From: Magallana gigas
Taxonomy: Eukaryota
Direction of reading: 5' to 3'
Length of the DNA: 64,000 nucleotides
Assembly (NCBI RefSeq): GCF_963853765.1
Contig: NC_088860.1
Location: 20,708,001 to 20,772,000, forward strand
Below are positions 39,890 through 56,700 of this stretch, piece by piece. A program made the translations under genes and the position numbers. Position 1 is the stretch's first letter. Each line of letters begins with the position of its first letter. Under the pieces are notes generated by a model. The model saw nothing but the letters and a program-made list of their open reading frames with translations, made no database searches and had not been told where the DNA came from.

Positions 39890-41524
39890 GTAAGTGTCGG
39901 CCAGAGAGTAATCATTATGCTGAAATATGACATATATAGGTCATTCTTTAGCAAAACAATAAATTTTAGTCCAAGTATTTATATATAAAAGTATACGTAA
40001 ACGGAGAAAAAGAGAAAACAAGAAACAAAGGTTGGAATACCTTGTTAAAAAATTTGATTAAAAAAAAACTCTCTGTCATGTTGGACAAAACACCCACCTC
40101 AGGTCAAAAACTTTATGACTTAATTATGATCTAAATGGTTAGAAGGATATGAGGGTAGATTTTTTTTATAGCTTAATTATCGTATCTAGTATATTAGTTT
40201 GATAATAGTAAAAAATGGTATAATAAGATTTTAATAGGCCTACGGTATATTTTGTTTCACCAATATCAAGTTTTTATCACTCTTTTGATATTGTGAATAC
40301 ATATGAGTAGAAAATCAAAAGCAAATCACAGAGGAAAATAAGGAGGCAGGGTGGTCAACTAATTAATCCCCAGATCCTAAATAAACATTGACACATAATA
40401 TTTTCTGTCATAAACTACCATTTAGAAAGAAAAAAAAAATCCAAATAATTTATCTTTAATATTTGATCATTTTCCTATATCTTTATACAGTGTTCTTCTT
40501 CATAAGAAGGTAAATATAGCCTAAAAATGGCCACCACTCCTTCTTAAGCTTATCGATTTCTGTGTAATTCATTACGATACTGGCCATTCTCTTTACTCTG
40601 TTTGTACAAACATATCATAGTTTGATCTTTCTTTGATTACAATTAGTATATATGTACTGTAGTATCTTTATTATCATTTGTTTGATTTCCCTTTCTATCA
40701 ATTCTATTTTCATTATTAGTAAAAATAAAAAATCATTTGATTTATGTAAATATGTTAGATTTTTGCAGTCGCTAATGTTATATTGTCATGCAAAAACATG
40801 TACTATACCGTTGATTTATTATGCTTTACGCACAAAAGCTGCATTTTCAGTGAATTTTTTACAGAGATTTTACTTGCCCATGGGTGCAAAGTGAACAATA
40901 AATCATAAAATGCACTTTTATTGACATATTCAAGAAGAAAATATCAAATTGAGTCTTCTTGTAGCTTGAATCGTCCTTTATAATGTCACTATTCTAGTTT
41001 GAAATTGAAGGAATTTGAATTTGCTTGTAACTGTTTTTTGATAGTCATTCTGTGTTGTTTAAGTAAAATAAAAATTACATACATATATTTATTTCATTGG
41101 TCAATCATCAATCCTTACCAGTGAAAAAAATGTTTTGCACGTAGACTTATAGATTGCTTTTTTTTCATTTATAAAGACAATGAACTTATAGGCCTATTTA
41201 CAGCCATTGTAAAATATAATGAAATCTTACACATGTAGAACAAAAAGGGTGTTAGAAAATTGGCATTCCAATTCCATGAGGGGAAATATATTTTTATCCT
41301 CGTTTTTCATGGTATTGCTGATTACAATTTATCCAGAGAGTCCAATTTCTTTTTTTTCACGTTATAGAATTTACCAAGTGTGAAATAAAAAGGCAATAAT
41401 GTTCAATTAATATTATCAACGGATGAGTGTTTCAGAATTAACTTTCATTATTTGTCTGTTCTCGATACAGATATTCTTCGTCCAAGTCTGATTGTTTCTC
41501 TTGTCCTCGAAAAGCTCTAACATT

Positions 41525-44500
41525 ATGGAGCGCATTTCATCTTGTCTGGAAAGCTTATTCGTCAGAAGAACTACAATTCTTTGTCTAATTTTCTACACAA
41601 ACACACTGGATAATATTTTACTTACATCAGTTGGTAAGTCAAGTGCAATACTATCTTTTTTGAACATATATAACTTACCTTATGTATTTCTTGTTGTTTT
41701 TTTTTTATTGTTTAACTGTGATGAAGTAAACTTCTGTATACAAGGTTATTTTCGCCTCGTGTTATTTTCGTCCTCCTTGATAAGCAGACGGTTTCGCCCC
41801 TTCTTGAACTCGCATAGACATAGTTGTGAGTAAAGAGAGATACGTTAAGACATTAGAATACGCCCAGTTTAAAATTCGCCCATTGACAACGAGGACGAAA
41901 GGAGCGAAAATAAAACGGGGGCAAATATTTCCTTGTATACAGTACTTCACGTCATATGTCATTTTATCATTATATTAATTTGTTAGGATTATCTATGAAT
42001 TTTAAGTCAGTTTAACATACAGTCATATGATCACAATTTTTCATTTCATAGTTCCAATCATTCCCGAGGTGTTAATGGAACTCGACAGAATTGACGACCC
42101 GGACAAAAACGGAAACGAGAGCATTAGGCCTAATTTAGCGATCACGGACAAAAATATATCAGATTCTCTCAGTTTCACCAAACAGTTGCTGCAGGAATCG
42201 TACAAAGCCCTGGACGAGAACAGTCAGGTCGGATTGCTTCTTTCCTCCAAAGCATTAGTACAAATCCTGGCAAATCCCTGTGTAGGATGTCTTTCTGAAA
42301 GGTATCGCTGTAGGAAAGGTGATTGTATAATGATATATTGTGTTAAACTTGACGTCTTAGTTTACAGTTGCCATAAGGAGCAATGCGTAATGAATGATTA
42401 ACAGGTAAAAACGAAGTTAACCCTTGTCACAAATTATATAGCAAAATTAATAGATATGATAAAATTACAAAAACATTACGTTTATGTTGTCTTGCATGTA
42501 TCTTTTAACGTGTATTGAATTGATATGATATTATAATATATTTACAGCTTTTTATGTATGCTTACAATGCATTAACATAACACTCGTTTCGTATTTATAG
42601 ATTCATCAACGCATTGCAATTATATTTTAAGAACACCTTATATTTATGAACTTGGCTCCCTAGTACCGTTTGATAAAGTATATGACGTGTATTCCGGTTT
42701 AAAGGTGAATGATATTTTTTTATATTTAAAAAGGTCTGTTTTTGTTATCTAGATATGGATACCATATTTTGCTTACTGTGGGAACAGTCTTACTCCTGAT
42801 ATCTTCTCTCGGTGAGTCTACTTACTTATCAACCATGTTTAACAGCTATTTAATATCAAATGAACTTAAAATTTAAAGCAAACGAACGAAAGCTTCAACA
42901 TAGAATTTCGAAAGACTTTTAATGATATAACAGTTTTGCCTCTTGCTATTACTAGTCTACGCATGCGCAGGAAGCTTTGTGTCTTTCCTGGCAGGACGAT
43001 TGGTTCACGGTATCGCGTCAGCCTTTACCTCTATAGCTGCTTTGAGTATCCTGGCTGAACTCTACTCGAGTGACCTTGAAAGGAGCAAGGTTATGGGTGT
43101 GGCAATGGGAGGGGTTGCATTTGGAGTTGTAGGTAAACTGTTCATTAATATATTCCGAAAACATGAATTATCATGCTAGGCATGCACAACTCGACATTTC
43201 ATTAAAAATCATCGACAATCAAAATTGCGTTACAACATTCTGTGCACATTGTGTATTCCAAGAATAAATGGCTTATCTGTTGAATTCTAGTATGTAGAAC
43301 AAAATTTCTCTTTATATTTGATTTAAGCATCTGACGTTGTTTTATTTTGTAGTTGGCTACCCTTTTGGGGGATTTTTGTACGACTACTGTGGCCAATCGT
43401 CTCCTTTCCTCATTTTGTCCCTTTTCGTCATTATTGACATCGGTATGGATTTGTTCTTCATATGAAATTGGAAACTAGTTCAAAGTATTCAATGGATTGC
43501 CTCTTTTCAATGCTTTACCTGTATAACGTCTCTTAAAATAGTTTTTCAGGGTTGCATTATCTGCAGATCACGTGCGATAACGGTAAGCAGTCGTCTGCTG
43601 TAATATAAAATCATTTTTAAAAATCACTTGTCATTTTACAGAGATAACGTAATATCAAAATATTCTAAAAAAAAATTTCGCACCCTAGATTCCTGGCAAA
43701 TACTTGCAATCTTCCATCTTGACACTTCTGAAAGATCCCTTTATCCTGATCACGGCGGGTAGGTCAACCTCAAACCCTCCATCACGTGTAATTAGCCACC
43801 AAAGACAGCCAAGCAAAAGTTTTATATCTTGATCATGAACTACGGAACTTCCATTTCTATTAGAGTAATTGATTCGGTTCTGCGGGGTATCTGTTTTATA
43901 TTTTCATCGATATCTGAGCGATTAAACGACTTTGATGTCATTATCTTTTGAACAGGAATAATCATGTTTACAACCATGGCGATGTCGACCTTGGAGCCGA
44001 CGATACCAATCTGGATCATCGATACCATGAAAGCACCAAAATGGCAACTAGGTACCCTGAATGATCTACAAATATTATGAAATACGTGTAGCTCTAACTT
44101 TTTTGCGCCTGTTGCTATGAGATTAATTAATTAAGCTGTGTCGATCATTCTGAATGAATGTGTAATTGACACCCTGAAAGTTTACTTGGAGCAGTTACTA
44201 TTTTGCAAAAAAGCGCACAAGTTTGTTAGAGGGATATGACCAAAAAAGCATATTTTCTTCAGTTTGTCAAACATAATGAGAACAACGAATTGCACGACAA
44301 CTAATATTGACCGAATGTTAGAAATATCAACTAAGATACAAGTACCTACTGTCCGAATTAATAGCAGGACTAAAAGCAAACTTGGACATGGAAAGAGAAA
44401 TTCACAATGTAATGATAATTGTCAAAGAACGTATCGAAAATCAATAAGACATACAATTTCTCATTATGTGAAAATGCAGTAAAATTTGTTTGATTGTTTC

Positions 44501-47500
44501 GCTTTGTCAACCCTCAGCGATAAATCCTAAATTACGTCTATCCAACAAGACATGGTCCGTAAATAAACACATTTGACATTTATTATGAGTATGTTTTATA
44601 TATTTAACGATAATTTTTTTTTCACATTTGTTTGAGTTTAGATATACATTAATTTATAAATAGACATGGATCATAATTCATATCTTTACACATTTATGCA
44701 TTTTATATAAACAACGTAATTATATTAAGATGAGCTAACTTACTTAGAATATAACCTATTTCTTCAATGGCTGATCCAAACTTCTACACTAATAATTTTT
44801 TGTTTTTTTTATTTCTGTGTTTTAACTTTAGTTTGTTTCTGAAAGCTGTACAAGCCGATATAATTAAATTCTTTTATATCGTATAAAGAATGTTGCCAAC
44901 GTCATAGTAAGACTAACGTCAAAAACGTATCAATACGCCTGACGTTACGTTTGAATTTTGTACAATATTACGTCATTTTAAAGGTGAAATGACCGTTTTT
45001 ATCTACAATGAAGTGTAAAAAAAATTAAATTATAAGCAATGAATTCAATATTTATTAGTTTTATACGATATAAAATGGTTTGAAATAGTTTACGCTTTTT
45101 TATAAACCGCTTCGCGGTTTATAAAGCGTAAACTACCCCAAACCATTTTTAAATTATATCGTATAAAACAAATAAATATTGAATTCATTCTTTAAATAAA
45201 AGGCATAACTGTGAACATAAAAGATTTAAACGGTTAAGAACACTACTTATTGATATATTTAACGTCTGCTGATGGTATGACAAAAGTTGCATACATGTAA
45301 TATGTTCTAAAAATGGTTCTCCTTTTACTTTCGTTTACAGGTTTAGTGTTCCTGCCAGACAGCATTGGTTACTTCATAGGAACCAATTTCTTCGGAGCGG
45401 TGGCCAAACAAATAGGAAGGTGATTCAGAATTAGAATTGAGCAACTGAAATACTATCTAATGTCAAAATTAAAATCAAGGGAACGTTATAATTATGAATG
45501 TATACAATCATCCTGAATATATATTAGAAGAAATTAATAAGGTGACGATTGTTAACTATCATATTCAAACACAATAAGTACACTTTACATGCATCTCCCT
45601 AGAGAAAAATTCACTTGTTTTATGTTAAATTACTGTATTGATTTCATTCCACATAATATACATTTGTAAACTCACCAAACTCTTACTTGTAGGTAGATAC
45701 GTGTACTATAGAAAGGCACAACCACTCAGCACATTTAGATACTCGTAAAGAAGCTTTAAATTACCATTGAAATATTTCATGTCATTTCAGAAAATGTTAT
45801 TTTTACACTCAGATTGGGTATTTAAATTATAAGTTTTAACTGTTAGTCCTCGGTATTCTATTATTCCAGATGGATATGCTCTTTATCCTGTATGCTGCTA
45901 CTGGGATTTTGTCTGATTTGTGTAAGTTAACCTTTTATGAAGAAAAGTACAAGGGTTTTTAAGTGTAGTATATACAAAATATACATATCGGCTTCCGTTA
46001 CTTACGGGTATCCGTTAATAGAAGTCCCACCAGTTTAATTAATATCAAAGTGTTTCATGAATCTACATTTTACATTGTACATTACATTGTTATGTAATAT
46101 TCAGTATTATATGTGTAACTCCTACAGTGATATCTTAATCAATACTCAATCTAAGAATGCATATTTTCTAAATCATATCAAACAGAAAACCGATTAGTTT
46201 GTGTTTTTCTTAATTCAGATACCATTTTCAACATCAGTGACCCAGCTAATGCTTCCACACTTTGGAATNNNNNNNNNNNNNNNNNNNNNNNNNNNNNNNN
46301 NNNNNNNNNNNNNNNNNNNNNNNNNNNNNNNNNNNNNNNNNNNNNNNNNNNNNNNNNNNNNNNNNNNNNNNNNNNNNNNNNNNNNNNNNNNNNNNNNTTC
46401 TCAATCCCTCCATATTAGGGTAATAAAACCACAATCCAACGAATAACATTTTTAAAGTATGACCTTTTTGATTTCTCCTTTAATTTGTGAGGATTACAAT
46501 TTCAATGGAAAATTTAATACAGCATAAATACACTGTGATAGAATTTTGCAATGAAGTACAAATGTAGGATTTGTGATGTATTGAGAAATTGTTTTCATCG
46601 TGGCGTTATATTGAATTTCCACTAAATCCAGTTTTAATGGCTATGACTTGTAGAATTGAAACTGCGGTAATGCATTCAACTTCCATACTTTCCATCAATT
46701 TCAGGTATAGTAGATGCGGCTTTGATGCCTCTGCTAGCTTTATTGGTGGATACACGGCAAATGGCTTCCTATGGAACAGTCTACGCTGTCGCTCAGTTGT
46801 CGGTCTGCCTTGCATATGGATTAGGTTGCCCTTTTTTCCAGAAAAGTTCATTTTTTACTCCTCTTCATAGTTGCTTGACGTTTTAAAATATTCCTTTCAA
46901 TTATAAGATTATCGCATGTACTGTTATTTTTTTTGAATGTCAGGCGCCTATAACTATCTCAAAATTATCATGAATTACAGTAACTGTTTAAACTGTGCAA
47001 AAAATTGGTTTTGATTTCCTCCCTTTTTGTTATTAAAGGGCCGCTCCTTGGTGGACAAGTCGTAAAAAGGTTTGGATTTCCAAGGTGATTATATATATAT
47101 ATACATGCTAAACTTTTCAGTTTTACAATATCACATCAATTCTATGGTGTTAGGATCCCGATGATATACATGTATATATAAGAGAAGGTAGCATATCTTT
47201 CGAAACTACAGTTTCAGTACTTTATAAAATAAAAGTGTAGTCATGTTAGTGTTAGTAATTTCATACAATACATGTATGCATTTGATATTTAAATTTATTT
47301 ATTTTTTCACCAACCCTTTCTTCAACAGTTCTTTATTGCACTTCGTAAACCTCTGCACCTAAATATCTATAGATGTTAGAATCGATTTTAAATTTTGTTT
47401 TCAGCCTAATGTGGTCACTTGGTGGACTATTAATTCTAACAAGTCCGTGTGCCATTGTTCTACGCTCTGTCAAAACCAAAGAGGAATGTATGGTAAGCAT

Positions 47501-48421
47501 AATGAACAAGGATGTCAAGGGTTGTCCAAAATTCAGATACTTTTCACCATTTATGACATTTAAAATGACTACATGTAATAGTTATATATATAAAAGTATT
47601 TCAAAACGGTTCTGTAATCAAGTGTTAGACATCGGTTGTTTTCAAGACCGTTGCGTCCAAGAAGCCTAGCTTTGTTAAACGAAACGCTTGTTTGGCCGAT
47701 AAATTGATTTAAAGTTGGAAGCATGCCTTGAAAGACATCTTACGTCGTTTGTTAATTTTTAAGCGGAAATAAGCATGTTGAAATTACAATCAGACAAAGG
47801 AGGAAAATATCGCCAAGTAATTAAAATACTACATTTAGTGCGCAGTGGTAGCTGCGTTAACTATCTTGAATATTAATCTTGGCACTTTAAATTGAGACTT
47901 TGATTTTTCTACAAAAGCTTCAAGGCTAGAGTATCGTTCAAGATCGTCATAACTAGGTAGGGTACTTATGGCCGCTCCGATTTTGATCATAAACGATGTC
48001 GTGCGTTGTTCCACGAAAGAAAAAATCTGCAAAAATATGATACGCGGATCTAAGGGGATGAATCGTTTAAATTTCACATGATTTTTTTAAAAATCATACC
48101 AAAAATAGGTTTCAGACTCCCTCCACCCGGCAAACAAAATTATACTTTGAAATCCCCCACGGAAAAAAAAATCTGGATCCGCACTTGAATTTATAACGTC
48201 AAATAGTTTGAATGTTACATGCAAGAAATTAAAATCAGTAAAATAATATTTAAAAAAAATTTTAATTGTACCCCAATTTTTTTTGGTGAATAATGGATAA
48301 AAATAGGATATTCATGAATTATTTGTATCTGCTTTAACAGTCATTGATACTGGATTCAGAGGACGAGGCGCTGGTAAAGGAAGACACACCACAATACAAC
48401 AGGCTCTATACGGACGACTAA
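41525..48421 (+). CDS. SLC18A: SLC18 vesicular amine transporter family member (VMAT-like, portabella-type substitution)
   Basis: Exons 41525-41633, 42052-42301, 42753-42811, 42956-43132, 43353-43442, 43542-43582, 43689-43758, 43956-44051, 45341-45419, 45870-45921, 46219-(gap), 46705-46824, 47039-47084, 47405-47492, 48341-48421. Motifs: LDNILLTSVVPIIP, ENSQVGLLLSSKALVQILANP, GRLVHGIASAF, ERSKVMGVAMGG, VGYPFGGFLYD, LLKDPFILITAG, LEPTIPIWI, GIVDAALMPLLA, YGTVYAVAQ, GPLLGG. Phases are consistent; exon 11 runs into the N gap. Confidence 0.92.
41734..41944. mobile_element. MITE, CTGTATAC-terminus family
   Basis: CTGTATACAAGG at 41734 and CCTTGTATACAGTA ending at 41944; internal TTTTCGCC / GGCGAAAA-type inverted motifs. 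Confidence 0.8.
45038..45189. repeat. 152-bp near-perfect palindrome with a 3-nt loop, part of a larger element starting near 44864
   Basis: The left arm AATGAATTCAATATTTATT...TAGTTTACGCTTT...ATAAACCGC, loop TTC, and right arm GCGGTTTATAAAGCGTAAACTA...AATAAATATTGAATTCATT are complementary over ~70 bp. TATATCGTATAAA is repeated near 44872. Confidence 0.85.
46269..46397. other. Assembly gap (129 N)
   Basis: Run of N that removes the 3' end and donor of SLC18 exon 11. Confidence 0.99.
48041..48185. mobile_element. Short MITE with GCGGATC TIRs
   Basis: ACGCGGATCTA at ~48042 and TCTGGATCCGCAC ending near 48184; lies in the last SLC18 intron. Confidence 0.6.
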
Positions 48422-49453
48422 TGGCGGGAAATTCAAATCATTTTCCATATACTTATTCAAATTATGTAAATGATAAGCACATATGTCAAAGTCTATTTCT
48501 CAAGGCTGTATGAAATTTAAAAAAAAAAAATAAAAAGTGATTTGGTTCTTTTCAAAGATTTTCCAAAAATGTGTACTGTTTCATAAACACTTGGAAGCAT
48601 ATTTTAACTACCCTTATTAGTTTTTAAGAAAATAAAGCCATATTAATTTGATTTCTGATATTCTTTAATATTAGTTATTTTTCACTCAAATGTTTTTTTT
48701 TGTAATTTACACTTTCATGTACCTGTGGACGTATCAATTTTTTTTGTTAAATCAGAAAGGGTCTTTATTTAATTAATTATTTATTTATTTATACATCATA
48801 CTTTTGAGTGAAAATATTTATCCTACCTTAGTAGAAAGATGGCAACCAAACAATGATTCCCTTAAAAGCACACCTCCAATTTTTTTTTTTGGGGGGGGGG
48901 GGGGGGGAGGGGGTTGGGGGCACGAAGAACAGAACTTTGTGTATGCTTACCTTCACCGTTTGATCTGGTAATCAATTATGGTCATTCAATCAGTGCATAG
49001 AACTCTTAAATATATACTTATATGTCTATCAAACTGATTACAAAATATTTGTTGTGCAAACTATGACAGACCGACTGACACTTGCAAATGTAGACAGAAT
49101 TTTAATAAAATAACAATTGCATATTTTATAATATATTACAATTAGCAACAAAACCTTTCTTTTCTTTAATATCTGAAATAACAAAATCAAAAAATAAAAT
49201 TTTTAATAACATAAAAGCAAGATACAACATTATTATAAAAAAAGAGACGCTTTCATTTAAAACAAAAATATGACGGGAGAGAAAAATTCAAAACAAAAAA
49301 TCGCAGAAAAAATCAATGTCATTATAATCTTGATTGAATGTGAAATATACATGATTTTGAAAAGTTTAAAAATAATGCCCATGGAACACATTGCTTACAG
49401 AAATAATAACAACATACTTAATTATTTATGTTCCTACCATTAACATATACGGT

Positions 49454-53700: not shown

Positions 53701-56700
53701 TGGTGCAGTAGTTCTTGAGAAGAAGATTTTTAAAGACACGCATCCTATACTCACTGTTTCGCAATTTTATTTGACAATTTAAAATTCCTTTCCCATAAGG
53801 ATGCTTTGTACCAAGTTTGGTTAAATTTGGCCCAATGGTTTTAGAGAAGAAGTAAAAAATTGTGAAAAGTTTACAGACAGACGGACGTACAACAGATGAT
53901 CAGAAAAGGTCACTTGAACCTTCGGTTCAGGTGAGCTAAAAACTTAACATTAAGGATCAAGAAATAGACTTAAATTCTATTAATTTTAGCCTTTTATTTA
54001 AAGAGCTGTGTAACAATACCCTTAGTTGCTTCTGTTCCATGTGAAAATAAAGATAGCCTAGCCTAAATTAAAGGCTTTAGCTATCTTATTCCCTTTTCTG
54101 CCCCACTTTATTATGATCATTAAGATTTATTCCAAAGATGGGTATAATACACGTAATACAAGCTTTAGGTGATTAGTTGAGAACCATACCCTGGTCACCC
54201 CGATAGCCCCGATGTTGCCTCCATATGTCGTCGTGGCTTGGCTTGCCCCTATAGCACCTGATATTATGGTGCCTATACCTTCTACCATTATTCCTCTATT
54301 AACTGCATGCTGTGGAGGGGGAGGCACGCGGCTCATACTTGCGCATGCGTAGTAATCACCGATGGAATCCAGAATCGATAGAAACGTGGCAATTAGAAAA
54401 CCAAGAAAAACTGGTGTTGAAAAGCTTACAGCACCATGCATACCTAAAAAGTAATAAAAGTATTGCATTTCTGTACAATCGTTGCATGTCTATACAATTA
54501 TTGCAAATACCGGTAAATGTATCTCCAACATTATTCAACTACCATTTTTGGGGGGTAATATTCATCACAAAATCAAAAGGTAAAAAGGGAAAAAATACAA
54601 TAAGACCAAAAGCTATAAATATACATGAGTTCTACAGGTATGGCTGTAATATACATCCACCTGGGTAAGGAAAGATAAACCAGTCTGCCGCGTCTATTCC
54701 ACTGAGTCGAGAGTCGGACCGGGCTTTGTATCCTTTGTCTAACTTATCATCCGTAAATCCACCGGCCGCTGTTATTATCCAACTCACTATCCAGCCTACG
54801 ATCATGGATATAAGAATCTATGGATATAAGGATACATCCAGTTTTAGGATACACCACATGTAAAACTTTGAAGTATTTGTCATTTGGGAAATGAAGATAC
54901 TGTCACATATAGTGCACTAATATTATAAAGGCAAAATATTCACTCCAGCGACAGCCACATTTTATGGCATCAGGCTAGAATTTTTTTTAAATATTGAAAT
55001 GGTATTGTATATAGGGAAATATTCGCCCCGTTTTATTTTCGCCTATTTCGTCCTCGTTTTATCGGTTGAATTTAAGACTGGACGAATTCCAATATCTCAT
55101 ATTATCTTTCTTTAAACACAACTGTGGCTGGGCGAAATTAAGACGGGGCGAAACTGTTAGCAAGTGTAGAAGGGCGAAAATTACACGGGGCGAAAATAAC
55201 TCTGTATACAGTAGCTGATCTGCAATGTAATGAAAAGAAACTTACAGCAAACACCTGGTGGATAGGGTACTTGATGATTCTGCAGCCTCCTTTTGGAGAC
55301 CACACCGGAATTAGCATATTGTACTTGGCTAGGTAGAACGCCAGGATAAATCCAGTGGCACTTACGCTGAAGCAAACAACGTCAGGTATATTATCATGCA
55401 AATACTAACTCTCGTGGTTTGTTCCAAAACTCAGAAACAACGATTCCGCTTAAATTGAAATTGGCTTATAACCATATTTCGTTTTATCACATTAAGGCAA
55501 AGAAAACAGTCTAAAATGTCAGATAGTGTCAAACATGATTTGATGACAAAAAAAAAGCAAAATAAAAAAAAATGTTTGCCGCTATGTCCGATTTCTAACA
55601 TACACGATCAAGATAAAGAAAATGCATATGTATATCTGATTCAATTTTCCTTCATTTAAGAAATTTAAAACTTTCGCTCTTTGTAATAACCTTAATACCT
55701 ACAGAAAGGTGATCCCCCAATTGGGTACACAGAAATCCAATATAGGGTCCACCACGTATATCCCGAGCAGGAGAATGGTCGGCACTATTGTGACGGGGCC
55801 AATGAAGCGCAGCAGAAACCCTATCAGTCCCGTGCCCCCGATCAGGGCGTGGATGACCCCCACTAAGATCAAACAACCCTGCAACTGGACAACACAACAA
55901 CATAGCTCTAACACTAGAACCATTTTAACAAGAGCTTGGACTTTGGGTAGTTGAGTCAAACGGCAATGTGACGTAGACCTGTCTATTTCATTGTAGGCCA
56001 CTTAGCCATGGCTCTTTGAAATCAACAGGGTTTGCCTGGCTTTTGATGACTACGCAATCGGTGTATATTTCGCTTTCATTTTAACTTGTTTTGAAGCAAG
56101 AATTGAATCGTTACATCCTACTGAAAGTCCAAGTACTTGTTAAAATGGATCTATAATTTACCAATGATAATGGAACATAATCCGTCAGCAATTTATCATT
56201 TTTTTATGTTTGATAATTTAAATTATTTTTAATTATCTGTATATTGATTTGGTCAAAATTAGACGTAAAGTGAATAAATTTCTTAATATGTTTTATATGT
56301 TTGTAGGTTTCGATGGATTGCGGTTTATACGAAATTTTCATGCAGAACTATTTCTTTAATTATATTATTAGACAAAAAAACCCTTTAATTGGTTAAACTG
56401 ATTGGTATCACAATTACAGGTCAAGAAAATGCAATGTACTTACTTCCTGCATATTATTCAAAATGAGGTTTCGCATTTCTAATTCCTCATTAAAGCTTGT
56501 CAAAACTGATGCATTTGTAGAATTTACCGCTGGAAAAAAAATTGTGTGAAGCATTTATTAATAATGAAACTAATATTCATTTGGATAAATCTTATATGAA
56601 AACTTTATTTTCGATAGCTATTTTTTTTTCAGTGTAAGAAAATATTATTATGTATAATGGTGTATGAGCCTTAAGCGTATACTATAACATACGTTCTTCA

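What the first reader, a model, noticed from the sequence alone, without database searches (positions are those of the whole stretch)
41525..48421. Portabella-type orphan vesicular transporter in a mollusc: TM11 Asp replaced by Gln
VMATs and VAChT conserve Asp in TM1, TM10 and TM11. This protein keeps TM1 (LDN, GAT 41609-41611), the TM2 Lys (SSKAL), the LEP Glu and TM10 (IVDAA, GAT 46713-46715). It reads VYAVAQLSVC (CAG 46794-46796) where VMAT2 has VYAIADVAFC, and TM4 RxxQG is RLVHG (CAC 43006-43008). As I recall, the same TM11 Asp>Gln defines Drosophila portabella, an SLC18 member of unknown substrate proposed to mark an unidentified neurotransmitter system. A bivalve member would extend that system to Lophotrochozoa. 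The tail has trafficking-type motifs (EDEALV, YNRL, acidic end).
Basis: partly seen in the sequence, partly recalled or inferred. Interest (0 to 1): 0.7.

Follow-up and report, generated by a model that had tools for sequence, protein, structure and literature searches.

The report
Oyster orthologue of orphan transporter portabella
[quoted passage not shown] It belongs to the same old protostome lineage as the fly orphan transporter portabella, whose cargo is unknown, and genome databases label it wrongly as a monoamine transporter.

Summary
A 15-exon gene on the + strand (41525-48421) encodes an SLC18A-type transporter of about 473 aa.

- **Assembly gap:** it covers the end of exon 11 and the start of intron 11. 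It hides about 14 coding bases, and the reading frames on both sides are compatible. I did not fill it.
- **Transcription:** RNA contigs confirm 9 of the 10 splice junctions laid.
- **Paralogues:** the same genome has a canonical VMAT and an intronless VAChT, both with Asp in TM11. This gene is therefore a third paralogue.
- **Phylogeny:** in a maximum-likelihood tree all Gln-bearing proteins lie on one side of a 100/99 split from VMAT plus VAChT. They include fly proteins that NCBI names portabella. An AU test rejects grouping the mollusc clade with VMAT (p 0.0011).
- **Shared signature:** lophotrochozoan and arthropod members share about ten further substitutions and a C-terminal YxxΦ-acidic motif. 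Several of the substitutions fall at VMAT2 gate and polar-network positions. The TM4 His is variable and does not define the clade.

I read the gene as the oyster portabella orthologue. Its substrate, cell type and vesicular location are untested. It is a new member of a known kind, of moderate interest.

The parts
41525..41633 (+). Exon 1 with the start codon ATG 41525; TM1 including Asp (GAT 41609-41611, VMAT2 D33 equivalent)
   Evidence: RNA contig junction 41633|42052. An upstream in-frame ATG at 41423 is closed by TGA.
42052..42301 (+). Exon 2: lumenal loop 1 with two N-x-S/T sequons, and TM2 with Lys (42249-42251, K138 equivalent)
   Evidence: Junctions on both sides are seen in RNA contigs.
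42753..42811 (+). Exon 3
   Evidence: GT-AG. Junctions 42301|42753 and 42811|42956 are seen in RNA contigs.
42956..43132 (+). Exon 4: TM4-TM5; Arg 42997-42999 (R189 equivalent), His CAC 43006-43008 (Q192 equivalent)
   Evidence: Junction 43132|43353.
43353..43442 (+). Exon 5: TM5-TM6, including Tyr in VGYPF (P236 equivalent, a clade signature)
   Evidence: Junction 43442|43542.
43542..43582 (+). Exon 6 (41 nt), in the reading supported by RNA
   Evidence: RNA contig joints 43442|43542 and 43582|43689. NCBI oyster models use the same reading. My alternative 43550-43599 also keeps the frame but has no RNA support.
43689..43758 (+). Exon 7: the LLKDPFILITAG stretch at the start of TM7
43956..44051 (+). 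Exon 8: TM7 with Glu (43994-43996, E312 equivalent) and the conserved Trp
   Evidence: Junction 43758|43956. The junction to exon 9 was not seen in the contigs laid.
45341..45419 (+). Exon 9: TM8 with the clade signature LPDSIG (A337D, S340G)
   Evidence: Junction 45419|45870.
45870..45921 (+). Exon 10
   Evidence: Junctions 45419|45870 and 45921|46219
46219..46268 (+). Exon 11, the readable part: TM9-TM10 start with His in LPHFG (N388 equivalent). It continues into the gap in phase 2.
46269..46397 (.). Assembly gap (N run). It hides the last ~14 coding bases of exon 11 and the 5' part of intron 11.
   Evidence: Phase arithmetic and ortholog spacing. Not filled.
46705..46824 (+). Exon 12: TM10 Asp (GAT 46713-46715, D399 equivalent) and TM11 Gln (CAG 46794-46796, D426 equivalent), with Val at the F429 position
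47039..47084 (+). Exon 13
   Evidence: GT-AG, in frame, collinear with the oyster orthologues. Not checked with RNA.
47405..47492 (+). Exon 14: TM12
   Evidence: Not checked with RNA.
48341..48421 (+). Exon 15: cytoplasmic tail with ExxxLV (EDEALV), YNRL (48395-48406), the acidic end and stop TAA 48419-48421
   Evidence: A C-terminal Yxx[LF]-acidic motif is conserved in 31/39 clade members against 2/30 VMAT/VAChT.

Best explanation
The locus is the oyster orthologue of portabella (prt). Portabella represents a third lineage of SLC18A vesicular amine transporters, distinct from VMAT and VAChT and conserved across protostomes.

Shown here: it is an intact, spliced, transcribed 15-exon gene. It keeps the SLC18A core residues: TM1 Asp-Asn, TM2 Lys, TM4 Arg, TM7 Glu and TM10 Asp. 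It carries the clade-wide signature: TM11 Asp to Gln, plus changes at VMAT2 positions 135, 236, 305, 337, 340, 388, 400 and 429. It ends in a conserved tyrosine-based, acidic sorting-type motif.

Inferred: it works as a proton-driven antiporter that loads a small, probably cationic, solute into acidic secretory or synaptic vesicles. The substrate amine would be handled by the retained TM10 Asp and TM7 Glu. One of the candidate proton or hinge sites of VMAT2 (D426) is permanently neutral, and both hydrophobic gates are remodelled (F135L, F429V). The cargo, and possibly the proton stoichiometry, therefore differ from VMAT and VAChT. The cargo is unknown.
For: - **Gene model and transcription:**
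- **PDB similarity:** the near-identical C. gigas protein (99.1%) matches VMAT2 at E 3e-106 and VAChT at 6e-64.
- **Separate paralogues:** the same genome holds a canonical VMAT and an intronless VAChT, both with the TM11 Asp.
- **Identity of the arthropod clade:** it contains proteins NCBI names portabella.
- **Tree:** in the careful ML tree of 69 proteins the split between VMAT plus VAChT and all Gln-type proteins has support 100/99. The mollusc clade has 100/97 and the arthropod clade 100/99.
- **AU test:** it rejects a lophotrochozoan Gln-type plus VMAT clade (dlnL 41, p 0.0011).
- **Rooted tree:** with distant oyster MFS outgroups the Gln-type is one clade (SH-aLRT 99), sister to VMAT.
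- **Shared substitutions:** Q426 in 22/22 and 16/16 rows, Y236 and H388 in all rows. L135, T305, D337, G340, A400 and V429 are each the majority residue in both groups and rare or absent in VMAT and VAChT. Insects: 118-119 of 119 at the five signature positions tallied.
- **C-terminal motif:** 31/39 clade members against 2/30 VMAT/VAChT.
- **Roles of these positions in VMAT2:**
  - D426 is a candidate protonation or hinge site, and D426N abolishes monoamine uptake (PMC11695631, PMC12721464).
  - F135 is a lumenal gate residue and F429 an inner gate residue; D33, K138, Q192 and D426 form one polar network (PMC10959523).
  - N305 hydrogen-bonds the substrate amine (PMC12721464).
Against: - **Missing functional data:** I could obtain no expression site, subcellular location or transport data. 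Vesicular function is extrapolated from family membership and, from my memory, from the Drosophila work; the original portabella paper (PMC3201771) is not held and could not be read.
- **Unsafe root:** the root of the SLC18A tree is not securely fixed. The only outgroups I could get are very distant and join the long VAChT branch, and the tool warns of long-branch attraction. The shared residues could therefore be ancestral states rather than derived ones.
- **Low RNA coverage:** RNA contigs have depth 2-6, and the junctions of exons 8|9 and 11-15 were not checked.
- **Hidden codons:** about six codons lie in the assembly gap.
Confidence: 0.8

Rival explanations
1. It is a divergent, lineage-specific VMAT duplicate, as the database name 'synaptic vesicular amine transporter' says, and it still loads classical monoamines.
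For: The highest PDB similarity is to VMAT2/VMAT1 (E 3e-106). In the outgroup-rooted tree the clade is sister to VMAT. The residues that bind the substrate amine in VMAT2 (D399, E312, N34, Y341, Y433) are retained.
Against: The clade is not mollusc-specific. It spans Lophotrochozoa and Ecdysozoa and lies outside the VMAT clade, which has its own mollusc, annelid, nemertean and insect members. The AU test rejects grouping it with VMAT (p 0.0011). The genome has a separate canonical VMAT. In VMAT2, neutralising D426 abolishes dopamine and serotonin uptake (PMC12721464).
Confidence: 0.1
2. It belongs to the portabella clade but is not a synaptic-vesicle transmitter loader. It would be an endolysosomal or plasma-membrane exporter of a metabolite or xenobiotic, like the fungal SLC18 relatives or bacterial DHA1 pumps.
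For: Tyrosine-based motifs with acidic clusters also direct proteins to endosomes and lysosomes (general knowledge). Fungal SLC18 relatives are vacuolar exporters (bioRxiv 10.64898/2026.10.09.757917). The RNA that holds the transcript comes from bulk or metatranscriptomic libraries of unknown tissue.
Against: Conservation of the full SLC18A proton/amine core and of the lumenal glycosylated loop fits the vesicular transporters. From memory, and not checked here, Drosophila portabella was reported on synaptic-vesicle-like organelles of Kenyon cells.
Confidence: 0.1
3. The TM11 Gln, or the gene itself, is an artefact: an assembly error, a private allele, or a decaying pseudogene broken at the gap.
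For: An N gap interrupts exon 11. Old gene models of this locus are badly mis-spliced: UniRef K1QYP2 (P0001) skips exons and reads exon 12 out of frame.
Against: The Gln is conserved in all orthologues from independent assemblies. All readable splice sites are GT-AG and the frame is open throughout. Spliced RNA contigs occur in several runs. The protein is 70-76% identical to those of other oyster genera.
Confidence: 0.02

Closest known systems
Drosophila portabella (prt, CG10251) and its insect orthologues
   Same: Same side of the 100/99 split. TM11 Gln, Tyr at the 236 position, His at 388, Asp/Gly at 337/340 and Val at 429. Retained TM1 and TM10 Asp, TM2 Lys, TM4 Arg and TM7 Glu. C-terminal Yxx[LF] followed by acidic residues.
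   Different: About 40% identity or less. Fly proteins are longer (about 560-700 aa against about 473). The oyster has His at the TM4 Q192 position where most insects keep Gln. No functional or expression data exist for the oyster gene.
VMAT1/VMAT2 (SLC18A1/A2)
   Same: 12-TM MFS fold by sequence and the best PDB match (E 3e-106). Shared D33, N34, K138, Q142, N146, R189, E312, W318, F334, Y341, D399, Y422 and Y433.
   Different: D426Q, F135L, F429V, N305T, N388H, S400A, P236Y, A337D and S340G. It sits outside the VMAT clade. The oyster has its own canonical VMAT on the same chromosome, about 6.5 Mb away.
VAChT (SLC18A3)
   Same: SLC18A core residues. The TM10-TM11 exon aligns at E 3e-7.
   Different: VAChT has the TM11 Asp and its own signature residues: Y37, D200, C232, W334, P340 and Y429. 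The oyster VAChT is a separate intronless gene on another chromosome.
SLC18B1 (vesicular polyamine transporter)
   Same: Same superfamily and a proton antiporter of secretory vesicles. Weak PDB match (E 4e-8).
   Different: SLC18B1 lacks the equivalents of D33, D399 and D426 altogether and is 16-19% identical to SLC18A proteins (PMC12049414). The oyster protein keeps D33 and D399 and is clearly of the SLC18A type.

Membership tests
SLC18A-type vesicular amine transporters (VMAT, VAChT and portabella together) | MFS/DHA1 12-TM transporter with strong full-length similarity to VMAT and VAChT | tested here: met
   Single exons hit VMAT and VAChT in PDB. The 99.1%-identical C. gigas protein hits VMAT2 at 3e-106 and VAChT at 6e-64. 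Pfam MFS_1 is precomputed for the orthologues.
SLC18A-type vesicular amine transporters (VMAT, VAChT and portabella together) | Membrane-embedded charged core: TM1 Asp, TM2 Lys, TM4 Arg, TM7 Glu, TM10 Asp | tested here: met
   All are present at the aligned positions.
SLC18A-type vesicular amine transporters (VMAT, VAChT and portabella together) | Large lumenal loop between TM1 and TM2 with N-glycosylation sequons | tested here: met
   A loop of about 50 residues with NES and NIS sequons.
VMAT (SLC18A1/2 orthogroup) | TM11 Asp (VMAT2 D426), required for monoamine uptake | tested here: not met
   Gln, CAG 46794-46796. D426N is inactive in VMAT2 (PMC12721464).
VMAT (SLC18A1/2 orthogroup) | Placement inside the bilaterian VMAT clade | tested here: not met
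   It lies outside the clade. AU rejects lophotrochozoan Gln-type plus VMAT (p 0.0011).
VAChT (SLC18A3 orthogroup) | Placement inside the VAChT clade and the TM11 Asp | tested here: not met
   The VAChT clade (100/100) excludes it. The genome's own VAChT is elsewhere.
portabella (prt) clade | Groups with proteins named portabella, apart from VMAT and VAChT | tested here: met
   The split has support 100/99 in the unrooted careful tree, with names.
portabella (prt) clade | Monophyly of lophotrochozoan plus ecdysozoan members on a rooted tree | tested here: inconclusive
   The group is monophyletic (SH-aLRT 99) with distant oyster MFS outgroups, but the root falls on the long VAChT branch and the tool flags long-branch attraction. 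No close outgroup was obtainable.
portabella (prt) clade | Signature residues: TM11 Gln with Y236, H388, D337, G340 and V429 (VMAT2 numbering) | tested here: met
   The oyster protein has all of them. Insects have 118-119 of 119 at the five tallied positions.
portabella (prt) clade | C-terminal Yxx[LF] followed by acidic residues | tested here: met
   YNRLYTDD in the window. Present in 31/39 clade members against 2/30 VMAT/VAChT.
portabella (prt) clade | Neuronal, vesicle-associated protein with a cargo that is not a classical transmitter | not testable with these tools
   The only evidence is spliced RNA contigs from libraries of unknown tissue.

The most novel reading that the evidence does not exclude
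Portabella-type transporters are a third SLC18A lineage that was already present in the protostome ancestor. None was seen among the deuterostome or rhabditid-nematode hits. The lineage is defined by a permanently neutral TM11 site and remodelled gates. In molluscs, as proposed for flies, it would load a still unidentified transmitter, perhaps with a proton stoichiometry different from the 2 H+ per amine of VMAT and VAChT. Oysters, snails and annelids would then have an unmapped transmitter system that is currently hidden under the label 'VMAT-like'.
Probability: 0.3. Interest if true: 0.8.

Novelty: new member of a known kind. Interest (0 to 1): 0.45.

Why it matters
**Annotation.** This gene and its orthologues in molluscs, annelids, nemerteans and crustaceans are named 'synaptic vesicular amine transporter(-like)'. 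They could be taken for VMAT in studies of monoaminergic systems. A recent bivalve study used insect portabella only as an outgroup and reports a single VMAT per protostome (bioRxiv 10.64898/2026.08.17.745212).

**Evolution.** The orphan portabella lineage is pan-protostome, not an insect peculiarity.

**Mechanism.** The clade is a natural experiment. One of the disputed proton or hinge sites of VMAT2 (D426) is neutralised, and both gates are altered, under long purifying selection. This gives concrete residue swaps to test proton coupling and substrate choice. It also offers non-insect systems in which to look for the cargo.

Tried and rejected
1. **Exon 6.** I first chose 43550-43599 because its translation resembles heterodont bivalve orthologues and keeps the frame. 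RNA contigs and the NCBI oyster models instead support 43542-43582, so I dropped my reading. It differs only in about 17 loop residues, and the tree used the final one.
2. **Spliced protein as a query.** It has no single reference, so I did not paste it into any search. I searched with single exons and then with full-length database relatives.
3. **The original portabella paper** (PMC3201771, doi 10.1016/j.neuron.2011.08.032) is not held. Statements about fly portabella biology rest on memory and on citing papers.
4. **Outgroup.** No SLC18B1 sequence was obtainable as an id. Intronless oyster MFS genes found with TIGR00880 are very distant. I used three of them only as a rough root.
5. **SLC18B1 as a guide to polarity.** Rejected, because it lacks D33, D399 and D426 (PMC12049414).
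6. **Rfam and tandem-repeat scans** of the region found nothing.
7. **An accidental display.** The alignment printed the C. gigas database protein across the stretch that the gap hides. I did not use those letters to fill the gap and do not reproduce them.
8. **TM4 His as a family marker.** Rejected.
9. **Structure prediction.** Not run. It would return an MFS fold without coordinates I could measure.
Full report
**What is there.** Reading 41300-48700 and chaining exons by frame and GT-AG sites gives a 15-exon gene on the + strand. It runs from ATG 41525 to TAA 48419-48421 and encodes about 473 residues. An in-frame ATG at 41423 is closed by a TGA, so the 35-residue N-terminal extension in the NCBI C. 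gigas model cannot be made from this allele.

- TM1 Asp, GAT 41609-41611
- TM4 His, CAC 43006-43008
- TM10 Asp, GAT 46713-46715
- TM11 Gln, CAG 46794-46796

HMMER against PDB sequences aligns exon 12 with the TM10-TM11 segment of human VMAT2 and VAChT. The Gln falls on their TM11 Asp. Exon 4 aligns with TM4-TM5 of VMAT1/2.

**The gap.** The N run 46269-46397 lies at the 3' end of exon 11. Exon 11 enters it in codon phase 2. Exon 12 begins at 46705 behind an AG and needs one base from the previous exon. Oyster orthologues have six residues between the motifs that flank the gap (alignment with those columns masked). That corresponds to 14 hidden coding bases and satisfies the frame. Exon order and orientation are collinear with the orthologues. 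An alignment printed showed the database protein across that stretch; I made no use of it.

**Transcription.** I laid contigs on 41500-46268 from four runs: two recorded as RNA-seq (X4, X5) and two only guessed to be RNA (X1, X3). They show these joints: 41633|42052, 42301|42753, 42811|42956, 43132|43353, 43442|43542, 43582|43689, 43758|43956, 45419|45870 and 45921|46219. All but one are supported by X4 or X5; 42301|42753 has a clean GT..AG joint only in X1. This fixes exon 6 as 43542-43582, which is the reading in the NCBI oyster models, and not my first choice. Depth is low (2-6).

**Paralogues in the same genome.** Searching the assembly (564 Mb, window on contig 8) with exons 4 and 12 finds three loci:
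- this gene;
- an intronless 549-aa ORF on contig 7 that is a typical VAChT with the TM11 Asp;
- a multi-exon gene about 6.5 Mb away on contig 8, with VMAT-type TM10-TM11 and other VMAT motifs, including the TM11 Asp.

The window's gene is therefore a third SLC18A member, not the animal's VMAT.

**Relatives.** An exhaustive search with exon 4 and word-index searches with full-length relatives supplied the comparison set.
- The final model is 99.1% identical (463/467) to an NCBI C. gigas protein named 'synaptic vesicular amine transporter', so the window is Magallana/Crassostrea gigas or a very close relative.
- It is 70-76% identical to the C. virginica, Saccostrea and Ostrea proteins, as computed on the first exon 6 reading.
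- An old C. gigas model (UniRef K1QYP2) of the same locus is badly mis-spliced.
- Gln at the TM11 position occurs in proteins of many bivalves, gastropods, a chiton, Capitella, Lineus, crustaceans, insects and a basal nematode (Romanomermis). The Octopus and Gordionus (nematomorph) proteins were added afterwards and fall in the same clade.
- The dipteran members include proteins that NCBI names 'putative mushroom body vesicular transporter portabella', along with their Drosophila orthologues. This identifies the arthropod group as the portabella family.

**Phylogeny.** A careful IQ-TREE analysis (LG+C20+F+G4 PMSF, 69 proteins, 499 columns) separates VMAT plus VAChT from all Gln-type proteins. 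Support is 100% ultrafast bootstrap and 99% SH-aLRT.

| Group | Support |
|---|---|
| Mollusc clade | 100/97 |
| Arthropod portabella clade | 100/99 |
| Ecdysozoan group | 85/94 |
| Capitella plus Lineus | 97/86 |

The branches joining these groups are very short. The canonical VMAT clade has its own mollusc, annelid, nemertean, insect and vertebrate members. An AU test rejects the best tree in which the lophotrochozoan Gln-type proteins are held together with VMAT (lnL lower by 41, p 0.0011).

I could not obtain a close outgroup. With three distant intronless oyster MFS genes, the Gln-type proteins form one clade (SH-aLRT 99) sister to VMAT. The root falls on the long VAChT branch, and the tool flags long-branch attraction, so the root is not settled.

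Parsimony also favours one orthogroup. A single clade needs one loss, in deuterostomes. A grade of two old paralogues would need four reciprocal losses. No deuterostome Gln-type protein appeared among the hits listed.

**Shared characters.** Besides Gln at 426, lophotrochozoan and ecdysozoan members share residues that differ from both VMAT and VAChT (VMAT2 numbering). These are L135, Y236, T305, M308, D337, G340, H388, A400 and V429. Among 119 insect family members, Q426, V429 and D337 are each found in 118, and Y236 and H388 in all 119.

It is not a family marker.

A C-terminal Yxx[LF] followed by acidic residues lies within the last 16 residues of 31 of 39 clade members, against 2 of 30 VMAT/VAChT proteins. 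It appears as YNRLYTDD in the oyster, YGRL..EDD in gastropods and YKQLYNS.D in flies. The ExxxLV motif is limited to some oysters.

**Mechanistic reading.** In VMAT2, D33, N34, K138, Q142, R189, Q192 and D426 belong to one polar network. F135 is part of the lumenal gate and F429 of the inner gate (PMC10959523). D426 is a candidate protonation site and hinge (PMC11695631). D426N abolishes dopamine and serotonin uptake and reserpine binding, and N305 hydrogen-bonds the substrate amine (PMC12721464).

The oyster protein keeps D33, N34, K138, Q142, N146, R189, E312, W318, F334, Y341, D399, Y422 and Y433. It changes D426, Q192, F135, F429, N305, N388 and S400. The machinery for binding an amine and for at least part of proton coupling is thus intact. 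One acidic site is permanently neutral, and the gates and pocket lining are different. These differences have been held for the whole history of protostomes.

I infer a proton-driven vesicular antiporter for a small, probably cationic, solute other than the classical monoamines or ACh, possibly with altered proton stoichiometry. Family membership and the residue pattern are shown. Direction of transport, organelle, cell type and cargo are inferred.

**Prior knowledge and novelty.** In the held literature, portabella is discussed only for insects. One 2026 bivalve preprint used fly and bee portabella as an outgroup for VMAT and reports one VMAT per protostome. Broad SLC18 phylogenies do not name the lineage. 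The original 2011 paper could not be read, so I cannot exclude that non-insect orthologues were mentioned there. Orthology databases would very likely group these genes.

I therefore rate it a new member of a known kind. The added value is the corrected annotation, the pan-protostome distribution and the defined residue signature.

**Surroundings.** The gene is not nested in a ChAT locus. Upstream ORFs look ABCC-like (5385-5789, 9093-9656, + strand). An exon at 54127-54468 (- strand) looks SLC23/NAT-like. No Rfam family or tandem repeat was found.

Noticed in passing
window 41734-41948 and 44866-45201 (introns 1 and 8): RNA-run contigs pile up here at depth 200-570, with many loose ends leading into unrelated sequence, while the exons have depth 2-6. 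These are copies of dispersed repeats or transposable elements. The second region contains an inverted repeat around 45080-45150.
   Followed up: no
window 43597->43684: One contig of run X1 (library type only guessed) skips 86 bases with CT..AC ends, the signature of a GT..AG intron on the opposite strand. It does not match either reading of exon 6. Possible causes are an antisense transcript, a deletion allele or an artefact.
   Followed up: no
window 43550-43599: An alternative exon 6 reading (other acceptor and a GTAATA donor) also keeps the frame. Its translation resembles the TM6-TM7 loop of heterodont bivalve orthologues more than the RNA-supported reading does. It may be a coincidence or a trace of an older or alternative splice form.
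   Followed up: partly
window 41423-41491: An in-frame upstream ATG is closed by TGA in this allele. The NCBI C. gigas model (P0094) starts there and adds 35 residues. Saccostrea starts at the position of ATG 41525, so the extension looks like an annotation artefact or an allele difference.
   Followed up: partly
databases: UniRef K1QYP2 (P0001), XP_019921809.1 (P0125): Older C. gigas models of this locus are mis-spliced. P0001 skips exons 5-7, 10-11 and 13 and reads exon 12 out of frame, so the Gln is lost from view. P0125 includes intron pieces.
   Followed up: yes
G000 contig 6, about 47.64-47.77 Mb (L008, L014 and neighbours): A tandem cluster of at least five intronless MFS genes of about 370-390 aa matches the DHA1-type model TIGR00880 weakly. 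Their family identity was not determined.
   Followed up: no
window 5385-5789, 9093-9656 (+) and 54127-54468 (-): Neighbouring ORFs look like the end of an ABCC-type ABC transporter gene and an exon of an SLC23/NAT-type nucleobase-ascorbate transporter. The latter fits the scan's note of tandem NAT transporters just beyond the window.
   Followed up: no
P0029 (Owenia fusiformis, partial): This annelid relative has Glu rather than Gln at the TM11 position, together with the TM4 His. It sits on a long branch and the model is partial, so I left it out of the careful tree.
   Followed up: no
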